Shown: one piece after another, positions 267 to 9,588 of the stretch | Position numbering within the stretch: the stretch's first letter is position 1 | How the letters are laid out: each line of letters opens with the position of its first letter | DNA from: Blastocladiella emersonii ATCC 22665 | Taxonomy: Eukaryota > Fungi > Blastocladiomycota | Length of the DNA: 64,000 nucleotides | Direction of reading: 5' to 3' | Assembly (NCBI GenBank): GCA_025594325.1 | Contig: JANHCV010000010.1 | Location: 496,001 to 560,000, forward strand | The notes under the pieces: model-generated | The model's database searches: none | Told to the model about the DNA's origin: nothing | The model's input: the letters and a program-made list of their open reading frames with translations, nothing else | Made by a program: the position numbers and the translations under genes

Positions 267-1722
267 ATGGTACGGCGACGCACTCGCATGGACTACTCGC
301 ACACCGCGCTGCCGTCGCCGCGGTGGGTGCGCCACCCGACCCGGACGCGTCGGCTCACCGCCCCCCGCGCGCAACATGTAGGACGAGAAGTACGACGTCA
401 TTGTCCTCGGCACGGGGCTCACCGAGTGCATCCTGTCGGGCCTGCTGTCGGTCGAGGGCAAGAAGGTGCTGCACATGGACCGCAACGACTACTACGGCGC
501 CGACTGCGCGTCGCTCAACCTCACCCAAATGTTCCGCAAGTTCCGCGACGGCGCCGCCGCGCCCGAGTCGTTTGGCCGCGACCGCGACTACGCGATTGAC
601 CTGATCCCCAAGTTCATGATGGCCAACGGCGCGTTTGTGCGCATGCTGACGCACTGCGAGGTGACCAACTACCTCGAGTTCAAGCAGATCGCCGGGTCCT
701 ACGTGTTCCGCGACGGCAAGATCTCCAAGGTGCCCGCCAACGAGATCGAGGCCGTCAAGTCGCCGCTCATGGGCCTGTTCGAGAAGCGCCGCGCCAAGAA
801 GTTCTTCGAGTGGGTCCAGAACTACAGCGAGAAGGACCCCGCCACCTGGCAGGGCCTGGACATCAACAAGGTCACCATGGCCGAGGTCTACAAGCACTTC
901 GGGCTCGAGTCGGGCACCCAGGATTTCATCGGCCACGCCATGGCCCTGCACCTCGACGACACGTACCTGCACCAGGTCGCCAAGGAGTCGTACGAGCGCA
1001 TCGTCATGTACACCATGTCGGTGCTGCGCTACGGCAAGTCGCCCTACGTCTACCCGCTCTACGGCCTCGGCGAGCTCCCGCAGGCGTTTGCCCGCCGCTC
1101 GGCGCTGTACGGCGGCACCTACATGCTCAACAAGCCCATTGACGAGATCGTCTACGACCCGGCGACCGGCAAGGTGGCCGGCGTCAAGTCCGAGGGCGAG
1201 ACGGCGCACGCGCCCATCGTCATCGGCGACCCGTCCTACTTCCCCGCCAAGGTCGCCCCCAAGGGCAAGGTGATCCGGTCCATCTGCCTGCTCAAGCACC
1301 CGATCCCGTCCACCGACGACTCGGACTCGGTCCAGATCATCATCCCGCAGAACCAGGTCGGCCGCAAGTCGGACATCTACGTGGCCTGCGTCTCGTCGAC
1401 CCACAAGGTGTGCGCCGCGCCCTACTACGTGGCCATTGTCTCGACCAAGATCGAGACCGACAAGCCCGAGCTCGAGCTCCAGGCCGCCTACGACCTGCTC
1501 GGCCCGATCGCCGAGAAGTTTGTCTCGATTGTCGACCTCAACGAGCCCACGGCCGACGGCACCCAGGATAACGTGTTCGTGTCCAAGTCGTACGACGCGA
1601 CCTCGCACTTTGAGACGGTCTGCGAGGACGTCTTCTCCCTGTACAAGCGCGTCACGGGCAAGGACCTCCACCTCAAGTCGTGGGAGGAGCTCCAGGCCGC
1701 GGCCGCCGCGGCGCAGCAGTAA
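267..1722 (+). CDS. GDI1: Rab GDP-dissociation inhibitor
   Basis: ATG-only exon 267-269, intron 270-381 (GTACGG...GCTCAC...TAG), then DEKYDVIVLGTGLTECILSGLLSVEGKKVLHMDRNDYYG, continuing in ORF 466-1722 (DLIPKFMMANG, YPLYGLGELPQAFAR, GGTYML). Classic Rab GDI motifs. Confidence 0.97.
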
Positions 1723-2924: not shown

Positions 2925-4754
2925 ATGAACATGCATCGCCACGGTCATCATCAACCCGCCAAAGCACTCCTGCTCGCGGTCCTGCTGCTGTGCGCCACGT
3001 CCGCCGCGTGGGCGCGCTCGCTCACCGGCACCCGCGTCCTCGCCCTCCTCGACGACGCGGGCAAGCAGGGCGAGTACTCGAAGCTGCTCGGGTCGCTCAC
3101 CGGTAGGTTCTCGGCGTGACGTGTGTGTGGGAGGCGATTAGTCGGCTGATACGCGAGTGTAGAGCGCGGGTTCGACGTCAAGGTCGAGACCGCCGCCGCG
3201 TCCACGGCGCTGTTCGCGTACGACGAGCCTGTCGCGGACCACCTGCTCCTGATTGCGCCGTCCAAGCGTACGTCCTGTCGTGTCCTTCATTCCACGACCC
3301 GCCCTAACCCCGCACACAGAGCTCAAGTCCGGCCTGTCGCCCAAGACCCTGGTCGACTTCGTGAAGCGCGGCGGCAACGCGCTGATCGCGCTCGACGCCC
3401 GGGCCACCGACTCGCACAAGGAACTCGCCTTCGAGTTCGGCCTCGACTTTGACGACACGTCGGACGTCCGCGACTTCTTCGCCCACGCCGGCACCACCCC
3501 CGAGGCCGTCGCCGCGACCAACTTTGCCCCCGTCGACGCCCTCGTCCCCGCCGCCTTGCGCGTCCCCGACGCCGCCCCCGTCGTGTACCGCGGCATCGCC
3601 CACACGGTCCACGCGCGTGATAACCCCCTCATCGCCACGGCGCTGTTCGCCAACCCGACCACGCATTCGGCGAAGCGCGCGGATGGGAGCGGGGAGGATG
3701 TCCTGCGCCTCGTCTCGACGCTCCAGACGACGGAGAACGCGCGCATCGCGTTTATTGGGTCAACGGACGCGCTTACCGACGCGTACGTTCCGTGTCGCGA
3801 GTGTTCCTGAGCACGGCTAACGCGTACGCCGGGTGTAGCACCTTCGACACGCCCGTCGCGACCACGGACCGCCTCACGGGCACCACTTCGGCGGGCGCGA
3901 CGCGCCCGAGCAACCAGGCGTTCGTCAACGAGCTCGTGCGGTGGACGTTCCAGGAGAAGTCGGTCGTCCGCGCCGGGCGCACCGCCCACCACAAGGTCGG
4001 CGAGACCGAGCAGCGCGACATGTACCGGATCAAGGACGAGATTGTACGTTTTGTCAGTCACGCCACGGGGGCGACCGCACGACTAACCCGAACGCGATCA
4101 CAGGTCTTCAACATCACGCTGCAAGAATGGACCGGCACCTCGTGGGCGCCGCACCTGGCCGACGGCGGCGAGCTGCAGTTCTCGGCCAAGATGCTGGACC
4201 CGTACCTGCGCGTGCCCCTGCCCCTCGTCTTTACGACCGCGACCGAGGCGACGTACTCGGTCACCACGCGCCTGCCCGACGTCTACGGCGTCTTCACCTT
4301 CGCCGTCCGCTACACCCGCCCCGGCCTCGCCGCCGTCACTCACTCGGAACTCGTCTCGATCCGCCCGTTCCGGCACAACGAGTACCCGCGGTTCCTCACC
4401 GTCGCCACGCCCTACTACGCGGCCGCGGCGGCGCAGATCGCTGCGTTCGTCGTGTTCGCCGCGCTCTGGATCACGCACAAGCCGGCGCCCGCGGCTGCGG
4501 CCGCGGAGAAGAAGGTGGCGACGGAGGTGGATCCCGAGACCGAGCGCATCAACAAGGTCAACCAGCTGCTCAAGGAGGAGGAGGCCGAGAAGAAGAAGGC
4601 GGCGCAGCGCCAGGCGGCCGCAGCAGCGGCGGCAGCGGAGGTCGAGGGCAGCACCGACTCGATCGCCACCGTCACCGCGACCGCGACCGCGACGGGCGTC
4701 CCCGCCAAGCCCGCGGCCAAGAAGCGCGGCGCCGGCGCCAAGAAGAAGGCGTGA
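2925..4754 (+). CDS. WBP1: Oligosaccharyltransferase subunit OST48/Wbp1
   Basis: Signal peptide, then TRVLALLD...YSKLLGSLT, YDHLLLIAPS, LVDFVKRGGNALIA, LQTTENARIAFIGS, VRWTFQEK, FTLPDVYGVFTF-like segment, IRPFRHNEYPRF, a TM helix and a KKKA end. About 4 introns. Confidence 0.92.
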
Positions 4755-4909
4755 ACTTCTCCTCCCGTAATGGTGTTGTGTGGATCGTGAATAGCACGGC
4801 AAGTTTTTGCAATGCGTCTCGCCCGCATCTCAGTGTCCCCCTTTGACTCACAGCGCAGGCTGCGCCGCCAGCAGCTCCCGCTCCCCGCCACCCCCTGAAC
4901 ACACACACC

Positions 4910-6008
4910 ATGTATCGCCGAAATTCAAACTTCAAGACGCCGCTCCGCGCCGCGCCACCTGGTGCAACGCCAACCGCGGGGTCCAGCGCGGGTTCAGCGG
5001 CGACCGCGCGCGCCGCGGCGGTGGTGGTCCCGAGCACCCCGTCCGCAAAGAAGAAGATCGCCACGGCGACGGCCACGACGCCGCGGCTCGCCATGACCCC
5101 GCCGTCCACGGGCGGCGCCCGTGTCTCATCGGCGGCGGCCGGGTTCAAGTCGCCGCTGACGGCGCGCCGCGTGAGTGCGGGCGGGGCCGGGGTTCCGCTG
5201 AAGCGCTCGTCGTCGCTGGTCTCATCCACTACCGCTGCCGCTGCCTCGGTCCCGTCGACGCCGTCCCTGCGCACCGCGGTGGGCCGCGGCACCCTGCCCG
5301 CGACGCCCGCGTCGATCCTCGGCCGGCGCCGGCCCGGGACCCCGCCCTCCGCGACAACGCACGCGCGCGACCGGCTGCTCGCGTCCCTGCGCCGGCACAC
5401 GCGCGAGGTGCGCGGCGACGCCAAGGCGCTCGACGAGCGCGCGCGGCGGATCGGGATGTACACGAACCACCGCGACGCAGTACGTCAGATAGACGCGCTC
5501 GCTGCCGTAACCACCGAGACGCTCACACTTGACGCGTGTGTAGGGTGAACTCGACACCGTCGCGCGCCTCGTCCCGCGCTGGAAATCGATCGCGACGCGC
5601 GTGACGGGGCTGCTCGTCGACCGGTTGCGCGCGGGCGGCGCGATTGACACGATGCGGTTCCGCCGCCGCGAGTCGGTGCGCAGCGGCAAGGCGCGCGAGC
5701 GGCACAGCCATAGCCATGTGCGCCGGATCGAGGACGAGGGGGGCGCGGGGGTCGGCGCGGTCGGGTTCATGACGGCGGGCCAGATCGGCGACGGCGACGA
5801 GAGTAGGAAGCGCGCGTGGGACGGCGATGAGGGTGACGGGCGGGAAGCGAAGCGCGTGCGGGTCGAGGAGAGTAGCGGGGATGAAGATGATGATGACTAC
5901 GTCGAGCCGGGCGACGTGGCCGTGGTCTTCGAGGCGTACGGGTGGCCGCTCGAGATGCTGCGGTACGACGCCGACGCGGACGAGTTGATCGATGAGGGCG
6001 AGGCGTAG
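4910..6008 (+). CDS. Putative Sfr1/Mei5-family recombination mediator
   Basis: Intron 5480-5543 joins ORFs 4910 and 5601 in frame. Low-complexity N-terminus, coiled coil, LVPRWKSIARRV...L, an acidic loop, and terminal FEAYGWPLEMLRYDADADE resemble the Mei5/Sfr1 C-terminal domain (recognised by eye). Confidence 0.5.
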
Positions 6009-6154: not shown

Positions 6155-8107
6155 CTACTTGCGGCCCAGCACCCAGTACGTCTGCATCTTGCCCTTGCCC
6201 TTGACCTCCATGACGTCGAGCGGCTGCGTGACAAACTTGGACTTGATGAAGTGGTACGTCGACTCGGAGATGTGGATGTGGCCGGCCTTGGACGTGGACT
6301 CCATGCGCGACGCCGTGTTGACCGTGTCGCCGACGAGGCACCAGTGCGGGTTGAGGTCGCCCAGCACGCCGGCCGTGACGGGGCCCGAGTTGAGCCCGAT
6401 GCGGATGTTGATGGACTCGCCCGTGATGGTCTTGAACGACTTGATCATCTCGATGATGTCCACGGCAAAGTTGCACGCGCGCTCGGCGTGGTCGGGCACC
6501 ACGTCGGGGGCGCCCGTCACGCCCAGGTACGCGTCGCCAATCGTCTCGACCTTGTACACGCCCCACCTTTTGGCAATCGCGTCGTACTCGAGCCACAGCT
6601 TGTTGAGCGTCGCCATCATGTCCTTGGTCGAGGTGCGCGACGAGATGACCGTGAAGTTGGTGATGTCCGAGAAGAAGACGGTCACGCTCTCGTACTCCTT
6701 GGCCTCGGTCGCCTGCCCGTTCTTGAGCTGCTCGAGCACGCCCTCGGGCATCATCTTCTGCAGAATCGCGTCGCAGTTGTTGATCTGGTTCTCGAGCTCC
6801 TCGGCAATCGCCGTGATGGCGTCCACCTTCTGGTTCTGCGCCTGCTCGACCGTCGAGTTGACCAGCACCAGCGTGAGGAACACCTTGGCGCCAATGTCGA
6901 TCATCGAGAACCCGGCCTCGGCCACCGTGAACGAGATGAGCCCCGACGTGTACGAGAACCACGTGATGGGGAACAGCGACCACGTCGTGATGGTCGAGAA
7001 CCGGATCCACCGCAGGCCCGACTTCTCGACGTTGCACTGCGTCTCGCCGTCAATCGCGCCCGTGAAGCACGACCACAGCGAGTACACGACGTAGCTGAAG
7101 CACAGGCACGACACGAAGTGCGCGAGGTCGCCCCACGGCTGCTGCGCCGAGATGGCGCCAACGAACCCGGCCAGGCACAGCGCGTAGTCGTTGACAATCA
7201 CCTTGTACGGGTCGTGCGGGTACTGCGTGATCTCGGAGATGAGCAGGATGAGGACCGGGCACGTGGCGATCCACTCGAGGTACCGCGCGGGCTCGACCGG
7301 GTTCGCCATGGTGCCCTCGATGGTCGGCGTCAGGCGCAGCATGATGATGATGTACGACATGAACGAGATGAAGTTGACGCCGAGGAGGCACAGCGACAGC
7401 GCCTTCTTCTCCGGGTTGCGCGCGCCCGTGAACCCCATGTACGCAAACGACAGGCCCAGGCCGAACCCGAACGCCCCGTACCCGTACCAGATGTCGGCCC
7501 ACCCGCGGTTGTACGCCTGGCGCTCGTGGAAGAACAGCGTGTAGATGGCGCCCACCGTCGTCAGCACGATCCACGTCGTGAACTGCACCGTCAGGAACTT
7601 GAGCGACGGCGTCGACAGCATCATGTTCCACGACCACAGCTCCGACATGGCCGACTGGTAGTTGGCCAGCGCCGACCCGCCCTTGCTGCTGCTCGACCCG
7701 CCCGAGCCACCGCCGGCGCCGCCGCTGTTGTTGGACCGCGAACCCGAGTTGGAGTTGGAGATCATGCTCCCGCGCACGTTCGCCTGGCTCTCGGACTTGC
7801 GGCCTACACACACGCACGCGTGGTATAGGGGTCAGTTGGATCGCGCACCCGCTCGCGCGTACCGAAGACACGTACTGCGCAGGCCGACGGTGCTCGTGAT
7901 CTTGACGTTGGGCGACGACGGCGACGGCAGCAGCGAGGCGCCCGAGCTGCGGAACGACCCGTTGCGCGACAGCGGCTGCTCGACAATCGGGTGCTTGGTC
8001 ACCGAGCACTTGCAGTCGTCGCACAGCGTCGACGTCGGCGAGAAGCAGTACTCGGGGCAGTTGCACGACGAGCACGCCCCGCGCAGGTTATTGTCCTTGT
8101 CTTTCAT
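6155..8107 (-). CDS. GC1: Rhodopsin-guanylyl cyclase (type I opsin fused to class III guanylyl cyclase), 626 aa
   Basis: Exon 8107-7876, intron 7875-7804 (GTACGT...TAG), exon 7803-6155: 1881 nt. Helix-3 RYLEWIATCP, retinal Lys in DIGAKVF, coiled-coil linker, cyclase motifs FSDI, KVETIGDAY, HWCLVGDTVNTASRMES, VKGKG. Matches BeGC1/CyclOp as I recall it. Confidence 0.98.
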
Positions 8108-8831
8108 GGCGGTGGTGGCGGTGGTGGATGGAGAGGTCGGTGCGGCTACGGCGACGCGTATCGAGTGTGAGCGGGGGGAGGGAGAGCGGGAGCGGAAGGC
8201 AGCGAGTCGGGTGCACGCACGATTGCGCTAACTAAGGGCACGAGTCGAGGCGCGGAAGAGGCAGCGAGTCTCGATGGGCGGCGGCGCGGGACGGCTGCGG
8301 CGTGCGAAAGGGCGCGCGAGCGTGCGCGCGCGTGCCTGATAACCTTCGGCCACCGCGTCTGCATTTCCACGTTGAAAAAAAAAATGTGTCGCACCCGGGG
8401 GCGACCGCGTGCGCCGCGCGACGCGCACCCGTCCCACACGCACGCGCGGCGAGACGCGTCTCCCACCTCACGTGATGTCCCGCGACGCGTCTTCACCGCG
8501 CGTTGCGCCACAGTTGCCCCCCGTCTCCCGCTAATCGACGCCGTTCACAACACGCTTCTGATATCGCGACTTCGAGAGGGTGGGCACGATAAATAGCGGT
8601 CAGCGCGGACCGCTTGGCGAATGAGTGTCCGCGGGAGACCTGGCGGTCGCGATCGGCAGTGCGACAGGCCGCCGCGCCGATGTCTCGCGCCCGGGCGGCG
8701 TGAGCGCACGTGCCGTGTGTCTCGCGCGTCGGCTCGCGCGTTGTGACGCGACTTCTCAGTCTATCACCTCGTGCAGATCACTCAAAACGCATGTGAAACG
8801 ATTGTAACTTGCCGCCGATATCGTCGCGACC

Positions 8832-9588
8832 ATGGCCGAGAGCAACCCGAGTGACAACATCATCAACGAGTTTGCGACGTACGAGGAGTACCTCGACTCG
8901 CAGATCACGCCCATCGACCTCTTCTACCTCGAGGACAAGGACCTCGCGCGCCAGCTCGTCGAGCTCGGGTACCGCGGGTCCGGCGAGCCCATCAAGCGCG
9001 AGGAGTTTGACGCGCGCAAGAAGGCCGCCGAGAACTTTCGCCTCGCCAAGCGCTGGCAGGCCAAGCTCCTGTCCAGCCATGGCAAGGACTTTGCCCGCAG
9101 CGCCCTGCTCACGGCCCTCGCCGAGCGCGAGGAGGCGAACCGGAATGGCAAGATGACGGTACACCCAGTCGAGCGTGAGTCCGTTGGCACAAAGGCACTA
9201 ACGTCGGTGGCTCGTTTAGACCATCATCTTCCTCCGTATGCGCAACAGCCGGCAGCAGGAGATCTCGGGGTACATAGACTACGCGCACCGGCTCAAGTCC
9301 GAGTCGTTTGACGGGTACTTTGCCGGGACTAAGGTGATCCACCCGCGGCCGTCGGATCTGTCTTTCTTCAACTGGGAGACGCAGCTGTGCACCAGCAACA
9401 ACACGCCCAACTGGCAGGTCATCGCCGACAACGAGACGGGCCTGCTGTTCAAGAACAAGCGCGACCGCAAGGTCGTCAACGTTGACCCGCGCGCCGAGCC
9501 TGGCGACAACACGGAACGCAAGGAGCTCGCCTCGGTCGAGTACATCCAGGTCGTCCTCTACGACCACCTCACCCGGCGCAAGACGTGA
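8832..9588 (+). CDS. CFAP299: Cilia/flagella-associated protein 299 (C4orf22/DUF4464-like)
   Basis: [38 protein letters not shown]...EEF..RK; one intron (~9159-9220); then [57 protein letters not shown]. Confidence 0.88.

What the first reader, a model, noticed from the sequence alone, without database searches (positions are those of the whole stretch)
6155..8107. Light-gated enzyme: microbial rhodopsin fused to a guanylyl cyclase
One 626-aa ORF joins a Cys-rich cytosolic N-terminus, an extra TM helix plus a 7-TM type I opsin (counterion Glu in RYLEW, Schiff-base Lys in GAKV), a coiled coil and a class III cyclase. The cyclase has the GTP-specifying Glu (KVETIGD) and Cys (HWCL) and both metal-binding Asp residues. 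This is a one-protein phototransducer: photon to cGMP with no G protein. It is the most striking system in the window but is already described (BeGC1/CyclOp, zoospore phototaxis, optogenetic tool), so it is not new.
Basis: partly seen in the sequence, partly recalled or inferred. Interest (0 to 1): 0.85.

Follow-up and report, generated by a model that had tools for sequence, protein, structure and literature searches.

The report
BeGC1 rhodopsin-guanylyl cyclase gene, rediscovered
This is the already published BeGC1/CyclOp gene of the water mould-like fungus Blastocladiella emersonii, a single protein that turns green light directly into cGMP. It is real but not new, and only its small cysteine-rich N-terminal module is still unexplained.

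Summary
The interval 6155-8107 (minus strand) is not one open frame. It has an in-frame TGA at 7832-7834 inside a 72-nt GT-AG intron (7804-7875). Removing the intron gives a 626-aa protein that is identical, residue for residue, to the deposited BeGC1 of Blastocladiella emersonii. Its cyclase domain is 100% identical to PDB 6AO9.

Opsin, linker and cyclase all lie in exon 2.

- light-driven cGMP synthesis with a light/dark ratio of 5000
- eight transmembrane helices with a cytosolic N-terminus
- E497K/C566D switching the output to cAMP

Verdict: already known.

The one open point is the N-terminal module (residues 1-45; C12, C15, C17, C29, C32, C/H34, H39). It is conserved in blastoclad and chytrid rhodopsin-cyclases. 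It also occurs as repeats in unrelated mussel and sponge proteins and in an unidentified RhoGAP-Ras protein. It reaches no Pfam threshold and has no significant structural match. Published truncation shows it is dispensable for catalysis.

The scan also noted this cluster and the CFAP299 neighbour on this same window.

The parts
7876..8107 (-). CDS exon 1 (residues 1-77 plus the first base of codon 78); ATG at 8105-8107
   Evidence: An in-frame stop lies about 40 codons upstream of the ATG. The spliced product equals P0001.
7804..7875 (-). 72-nt phase-1 GT-AG intron holding an in-frame TGA (7832-7834)
   Evidence: Removing it is needed to reproduce the deposited 626-aa protein, and doing so is sufficient.
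6155..7803 (-). CDS exon 2 (residues 78-626 and TAG stop 6155-6157): TM0, opsin, linker and cyclase together
   Evidence: GC3 is 0.97 in this frame.
7973..8107 (-). N-terminal Cys/His module, residues 1-45 (C12 C15 C17 C21 C29 C32 C34 H39)
   Evidence: In 23 rhodopsin-cyclases C12, C15, C17, C29, C32 and H39 are invariant, and position 34 is C or H. Model pLDDT is 80-90. A profile search finds the module in non-rhodopsin proteins. No Pfam family reaches threshold.
7619..7672 (-). Cytosolic amphipathic helix -1, residues 122-139, preceded by a disordered Ser/Gly-rich stretch (45-119)
   Evidence: AlphaFold model. Residues 44-139 are reported as required for activity in the Catenaria orthologue (PMC8575461).
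7532..7609 (-). Extra transmembrane helix TM0, residues 143-168
   Evidence: Hydropathy and model helix 143-168. The transmembrane part superposes on the Rh-PDE transmembrane-domain chain 7cj3_B, TM-score 0.85 by target; PMC8575461 describes TM0 as a feature of enzymerhodopsins. Published prediction is aa 147-169, with a split-YFP test of topology (PMC4569695).
6848..7498 (-). Type I opsin, seven helices, residues 180-396; counterion E254 (7274-7276), D380 (6896-6898), Schiff-base K384 (6884-6886)
   Evidence: Pfam PF01036, alignment to bacteriorhodopsin, model helices, codons checked.
6707..6847 (-). Helical linker (signalling helix / coiled coil), residues 397-443
   Evidence: The model helix 369-428 is continuous with TM7. 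phmmer alignments to GC-A and sGC beta-1 begin about 40-48 residues before the catalytic domain. The heptad test was not significant.
6158..6706 (-). Class III guanylyl cyclase domain, residues 444-626; D457 (6665-6667), E497 (6545-6547), D501 (6533-6535), C566 (6338-6340)
   Evidence: Pfam PF00211, 3e-55. Residues 443-626 are 100% identical to PDB 6AO9. Foldseek target TM-score is 0.92-0.95 to 6SIR, 5OYH and 6AOB. Codons checked.

Best explanation
This is the BeGC1 gene (also called BeCyclOp, BeRhGC or RhoGC; locus H9P43_007630) of Blastocladiella emersonii.

Shown here:
- It is a two-exon gene whose 626-aa product is identical to the deposited BeGC1.
- From N- to C-terminus it has a Cys/His module, a disordered linker, helix -1, TM0, a seven-helix type I opsin with Schiff-base K384 and counterions E254/D380, a helical linker continuous with TM7, and a class III cyclase. 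The cyclase carries metal-binding D457/D501 and guanine-specifying E497/C566.
- The position of bacteriorhodopsin's proton donor D96 is Leu265, which fits a sensor rather than a pump.

Taken from published work on this same sequence:
- Green light isomerises retinal.
- The signal passes through TM7, the linker and the cytosolic N-terminus to a homodimeric cyclase, which makes cGMP from GTP.
- The light/dark ratio is about 5000 and the turnover about 17 per second.
- In zoospores the protein sits at the eyespot/side-body, and cGMP is thought to gate the K+ channel BeCNG1 to steer the flagellum.
For: Spliced product equals P0001, 626 of 626 residues, which UniRef names 'Bacterio-rhodopsin/guanylyl cyclase 1 fusion protein, Blastocladiella emersonii'. 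Cyclase domain is 100% identical to PDB 6AO9; 6AOA differs only at E497K and C566D. Pfam PF01036 and PF00211. Bacteriorhodopsin alignment gives R251=R82, E254=D85, L265=D96, D380=D212, K384=K216. The key residues are conserved across 53 family members. AlphaFold model shows eight transmembrane helices, a linker helix and the cyclase; Foldseek matches the RhGC cyclase structures and the Rh-PDE transmembrane domain. Papers: 626 residues, 5' RACE and phototaxis pharmacology (PMC4046227); light-driven cGMP, eight transmembrane helices and split-YFP topology (PMC4569695); E497K/C566D (PMC5967339); the only type I rhodopsin gene in the genome (PMC9730499).
Against: There is no substantive evidence against. 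No RNA run of this organism was available, so the intron was not seen in reads here. It rests on the exact match to the deposited protein and on the published cDNA and RACE work. My crude heptad test did not support a canonical coiled coil in the linker. The in vivo link to BeCNG1 is pharmacological only (PMC4046227).
Confidence: 0.98

Rival explanations
1. It is a silent or decaying paralogous copy of BeGC1, not the functional gene.
For: The interval has an in-frame stop if read straight through.
Against: The stop lies inside a canonical 72-nt GT-AG intron. The spliced frame is intact and identical to the expressed protein. GC3 of 0.97 shows strong coding bias. The genome paper reports a single type I rhodopsin gene (PMC9730499).
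Confidence: 0.01
2. The cyclase makes cAMP, or both nucleotides, rather than cGMP.
For: The Pfam domain PF00211 covers both adenylyl and guanylyl cyclases, and several database names for relatives say 'adenylyl cyclase'.
Against: The E497/C566 pair is the guanine-specifying pair. E497 is invariant and C566 is present in 50 of 53 relatives. The published protein makes no detectable cAMP, and cAMP output needs E497K/C566D (PMC4569695, PMC5967339; PDB 6AOA).
Confidence: 0.01
3. The opsin part acts as an ion pump or channel, and the cyclase is regulated independently of light.
For: The best solved non-enzyme matches are bacteriorhodopsins.
Against: The position of the pump's proton donor D96 is Leu265. 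TM7 runs straight into the cyclase linker. The published light/dark cyclase ratio is about 5000 (PMC4569695).
Confidence: 0.01

Closest known systems
BeGC1 / BeCyclOp / BeRhGC of Blastocladiella emersonii (GenBank KF309499, AIC07007.1; PDB 6AO9, 6AOB)
   Same: Identical protein, 626 of 626 residues, with the same residue numbering for E254, K384, E497 and C566.
   Different: Nothing at the protein level. The window adds the genomic context: the 72-nt intron and the flanking genes.
CaRhGC of Catenaria anguillulae (PDB 6SIR, 5OYH)
   Same: Same architecture, including the N-terminal module. About 75% identity over exon 2 to the CaRhGC-like synthetic construct P0003 (published figure 77%). The cyclase fold has target TM-score 0.92. 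It sits head-to-head with a DUF4464 gene, as here.
   Different: It is an orthologue in another genus. The variable region is residues 72-170 (PMC5967339).
Heterodimeric chytrid RGC1/RGC2 with NeoR (Rhizoclosmatium globosum)
   Same: Opsin plus class III cyclase, 48% identity (P0050). The 549- and 550-aa genes carry the same N-terminal Cys/His module.
   Different: Three clustered genes that work as heterodimers (PMC12264004). The 509-aa member lacks the module. BeGC1 works as a single gene product.
Rhodopsin phosphodiesterase of Salpingoeca rosetta (PDB 7CJ3, 7D7Q)
   Same: It is the closest solved rhodopsin domain (E 4e-22; target TM-score 0.85). PMC8575461 describes TM0 and cytosolic termini as features of enzymerhodopsins.
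   Different: Its output domain is a phosphodiesterase, and it is already active in the dark (PMC8575461).

Membership tests
Fungal rhodopsin-guanylyl cyclase (RhGC / CyclOp / RGC) | Type I opsin with a retinal-binding Lys in TM7 and a carboxylate counterion in TM3 | tested here: met
   PF01036, 7e-27. K384 aligns with K216, E254 with D85 and D380 with D212 of bacteriorhodopsin.
Fungal rhodopsin-guanylyl cyclase (RhGC / CyclOp / RGC) | Extra helix TM0 before the seven helices, so that both termini are cytosolic | tested here: met
   Hydropathy segment 147-170 and model helix 143-168. Topology itself was shown by split YFP in PMC4569695 and was not testable here.
Fungal rhodopsin-guanylyl cyclase (RhGC / CyclOp / RGC) | Helical linker (coiled coil / signalling helix) joining TM7 to the cyclase | tested here: inconclusive
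   There is a continuous model helix 369-428, but at pLDDT 49-65. Homology to the GC-A and sGC pre-catalytic helix is seen. The heptad test was reached by 2471 of 5000 shuffles.
Fungal rhodopsin-guanylyl cyclase (RhGC / CyclOp / RGC) | C-terminal class III cyclase with two metal-binding Asp and the Glu/Cys guanine-specifying pair | tested here: met
   PF00211, 3e-55. D457, D501, E497 and C566 are present and conserved. Residues 443-626 are 100% identical to PDB 6AO9.
Fungal rhodopsin-guanylyl cyclase (RhGC / CyclOp / RGC) | Light-dependent cGMP synthesis | not testable with these tools
   Published for the identical sequence (PMC4569695, PMC5967339).
BeGC1 itself | Sequence identity to the deposited protein | tested here: met
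   626 of 626 residues.
Plant ZF-HD dimerisation zinc finger (PF04770), considered for residues 1-45 | Match to the family profile above threshold, with the full Cys/His ligand set | tested here: not met
   No Pfam hit for residues 1-146 at E up to 0.1. hhalign against ZF-HD repeats covers only the C-terminal half: 29 columns, probability 79%, E 1.6e-5.

The most novel reading that the evidence does not exclude
The first 45 residues may form a zinc-binding domain of a family with no curated description. It has seven conserved ligands: C-x2-C-x-C-x11-C-x2-C-x-C/H-x4-H, usually preceded by RG. It is shared by blastoclad and chytrid rhodopsin-cyclases and by unrelated proteins: tandem repeats in mussels, two copies in a sponge protein, and two copies in an unidentified RhoGAP-Ras protein. 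It is distantly like the plant ZF-HD dimerisation finger. Because it is dispensable for catalysis, it would serve partner binding, pairing or placement at the eyespot rather than enzyme control.
Probability: 0.4. Interest if true: 0.45.

Novelty: already known. Interest (0 to 1): 0.15.

Why it matters
The gene is the founding member of the enzyme rhodopsins that make cGMP, and it is a widely used optogenetic tool, so finding it confirms that the scan can recognise a striking system from raw sequence. It adds no new biology.

Two smaller points may be useful:
- The N-terminal Cys/His module has relatives outside rhodopsins but no curated family and no known role.
- The photoreceptor sits head-to-head with a flagellar-protein gene (DUF4464/CFAP299) in three blastoclad species, which could reflect shared control during zoospore formation.

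Tried and rejected
RNA evidence for the intron: no served RNA run holds this DNA, and only relatives' metatranscriptomes were offered.

Coiled-coil test: a hydrophobic a/d heptad score for residues 396-443 was reached by 2471 of 5000 shuffles, so it is uninformative.

Fold of the N-terminal module: the stand-alone model has pLDDT 78. Foldseek against the PDB gave nothing better than E 1.9; the list holds rubredoxin, RING and NZF knuckles. Atlas look-alikes (LIM, rubredoxin-type ribbons) are leads only.

Pfam on 72 module copies: only sub-threshold FAM221 (9 of 72) and VCIP135_N. A literature search on FAM221 and cilia gave nothing useful.

Shared promoter motif: the three RGC/DUF4464 intergenic regions share no k-mers beyond shuffles.

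Literature on the module: searches for zinc or cysteine at the RhGC N-terminus found no description of it.

The paralogue/pseudogene, adenylyl cyclase and pump/channel readings were rejected (see rival explanations).

Full report
**What is at the coordinates.**
The minus strand of 6155-8107 starts with ATG (8105-8107) and ends with TAG (6155-6157). Read straight through, it gives 651 codons with one in-frame TGA at 7832-7834. The mechanical ORF list therefore splits it into a 91-aa and a 552-aa ORF in the same frame.

The stop lies inside a 72-nt stretch (7804-7875) that begins GTACGT and ends TGTAG. Removing it joins codon 78 across the junction (phase 1) and gives 626 aa. GC at codon positions 1/2/3 of exon 2 is 0.50/0.44/0.97, which marks this frame as the coding one in a window of about 64% GC.

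**Identity.**
- Pfam finds Bac_rhodopsin (7e-27) and Guanylate_cyc (3e-55) in exon 2 and nothing in exon 1.
- Against solved structures, residues 443-626 are 100% identical to PDB 6AO9/6AOB, 'Bacterio-rhodopsin/guanylyl cyclase 1 fusion protein'. Entry 6AOA differs only by K at the KVETIGD Glu and D at the HWCL Cys.
- The large protein search returned a 626-aa protein (P0001) at 100% identity, named by UniRef as the Blastocladiella emersonii fusion protein. Next came B. britannica (77%), Allomyces, Catenaria and many chytrid relatives.
- The spliced translation equals P0001 letter for letter.
- Avelar et al. 2014 report BeGC1 as 626 residues, confirmed as one transcript by 5' RACE (PMC4046227). 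Leonard et al. 2022 give the locus tag H9P43_007630, name E497 and C566, and state that it is the only type I rhodopsin gene in the genome (PMC9730499).

**Anatomy.**
Motif positions match the published numbering: RYLEW 251-255, DIGAKV 380-385, FSDI 455-458, KVETIGD 495-501, HWCL 564-567 (codons checked).

The HMMER alignment to bacteriorhodopsin puts R251 on R82, E254 on D85, D380 on D212 and K384 on K216. Counting along the same alignment, the position of the proton donor D96 is Leu265, as expected for a sensor. Across 53 family members R251, E497 and D501 are invariant. E254, K384, D457 and C566 are nearly invariant.

An AlphaFold model built on that alignment (mean pLDDT 77) shows the following:

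| Residues | Feature |
|---|---|
| 1-44 | compact N-terminal part, pLDDT 80-90 |
| 45-119 | disorder |
| 122-139 | helix -1 |
| 143-168 | TM0 |
| 180-428 | seven further helices, the last (369-428) running on into the linker |
| 446-625 | cyclase fold |

Foldseek matches the cyclase to 6SIR, 5OYH and 6AOB (target TM-score 0.92-0.95). It matches the transmembrane part to the rhodopsin phosphodiesterase transmembrane domain 7CJ3 (0.85).

The linker is homologous to the helix that precedes the catalytic domain in GC-A and soluble guanylate cyclase. My simple heptad test was not above shuffles, so the coiled coil is inferred, not shown here.

**How it works.**
The mechanism is taken from papers on this same sequence.
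- Gao et al. 2015 measured green-light cGMP synthesis with a light/dark ratio of 5000, about 17 cGMP per second and no cAMP. They predicted TM0 at aa 147-169 and showed by split YFP that both termini are cytosolic. Removing the first 90 residues raised dark activity (PMC4569695).
- Scheib et al. 2018 showed that the isolated cyclase domain is constitutively active and that E497K/C566D gives cAMP output (PMC5967339).
- Fischer et al. 2021 report that in the Catenaria orthologue residues 1-43 are dispensable, while removing 1-139 abolishes activity (PMC8575461).
- Avelar et al. 2014 placed the protein at the zoospore eyespot and proposed that cGMP opens the K+ channel BeCNG1.

**The N-terminal module.**
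Twenty-nine of the 120 listed relatives carry C-x2-C-x-C-x(8-16)-C-x2-C-x-C/H-x(3-5)-H near the N-terminus. They come from blastoclads, chytrids and Gonapodya. In an alignment of 23 of them C12, C15, C17, C29, C32 and H39 are invariant, and position 34 is C or H.

A profile of this alignment, searched against 1.84 billion proteins, found 226 hits at E up to 0.001. Many are N-terminal pieces of rhodopsin-cyclases. Others are not:
- six and nine tandem copies in hypothetical proteins of the mussels Sinanodonta and Potamilus
- two copies in a protein of the sponge Oopsacas
- two copies in a RhoGAP-Ras protein of unidentified origin
- a ZF-HD repeat protein (five PF04770 repeats; source not looked up)

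Profile-profile comparison with the ZF-HD repeats gives 79% probability over 29 columns. Pfam gives only sub-threshold FAM221 and VCIP135_N matches. Structure searches give no significant match.

In the enlarged alignment A4 the invariant Cys/His columns are partly forced by the pattern I used to cut out the copies. In Rhizoclosmatium the two 549/550-aa genes have the module and the 509-aa gene does not. I found no paper that describes the module.

**Surroundings.**
| Window position | Strand | What |
|---|---|---|
| 382-1719 | + | GDI |
| 3253-4751 | + | OST48 |
| 4847-6005 | + | high-GC3 ORFs with no Pfam match; they end 150 nt from the BeGC1 stop, convergent |
| 8832-9588 | + | two-exon DUF4464 (CFAP299 family) gene; starts 724 nt from the BeGC1 ATG, divergent |

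The same head-to-head pair is present in B. britannica and Catenaria. It is absent at the Allomyces, Rhizoclosmatium and Synchytrium loci examined. The three spacers share no k-mers beyond chance.

**Verdict.**
This is a correct rediscovery of a well-characterised gene. Novelty: already known. Interest is low, apart from the uncharacterised N-terminal module.

Noticed in passing
window 8108-9588 (+ strand gene 8832-9588); L001 4094-4911; L002 4344-5217: A DUF4464 (CFAP299-family, flagellar) gene lies head-to-head with BeGC1 across 724 bp. Its two pieces give Pfam E-values of 9e-30 and 2.5e-48. The same divergent pair is found in B. britannica and Catenaria anguillulae, but not at the Allomyces, Rhizoclosmatium or Synchytrium loci examined. 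No shared k-mer motif was found in the spacers.
   Followed up: partly
window 7973-8107 (residues 1-45): The Cys/His module at the N-terminus has homologues outside rhodopsins: mussel tandem repeats, a sponge two-copy protein and an unidentified RhoGAP-Ras protein. It reaches no Pfam threshold. It weakly resembles the plant ZF-HD dimerisation finger, FAM221 and the VCIP135 N-terminus.
   Followed up: partly
window 4847-6005 (+): Two consecutive high-GC3 ORFs (0.84 and 0.89) with no Pfam match end 150 nt from the BeGC1 stop codon on the opposite strand, so the two 3' untranslated regions probably overlap.
   Followed up: no
window 3253-4751 (+); L003 3799-5555: An OST48 gene lies about 1.4 kb from the 3' end of BeGC1. 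In Allomyces macrogynus an OST48 gene lies directly upstream of one RGC paralogue, in tandem orientation. It is not seen within 6 kb in B. britannica, so this may be chance.
   Followed up: no
L004 3976-9821: Rhizoclosmatium globosum has three rhodopsin-cyclase genes in one cluster. The 509-aa one starts without the Cys/His module, while the 549- and 550-aa ones have it.
   Followed up: partly
window 382-1719 (+): A single uninterrupted exon encodes a full GDP dissociation inhibitor (PF00996, E 2e-216) with GC3 0.97.
   Followed up: no
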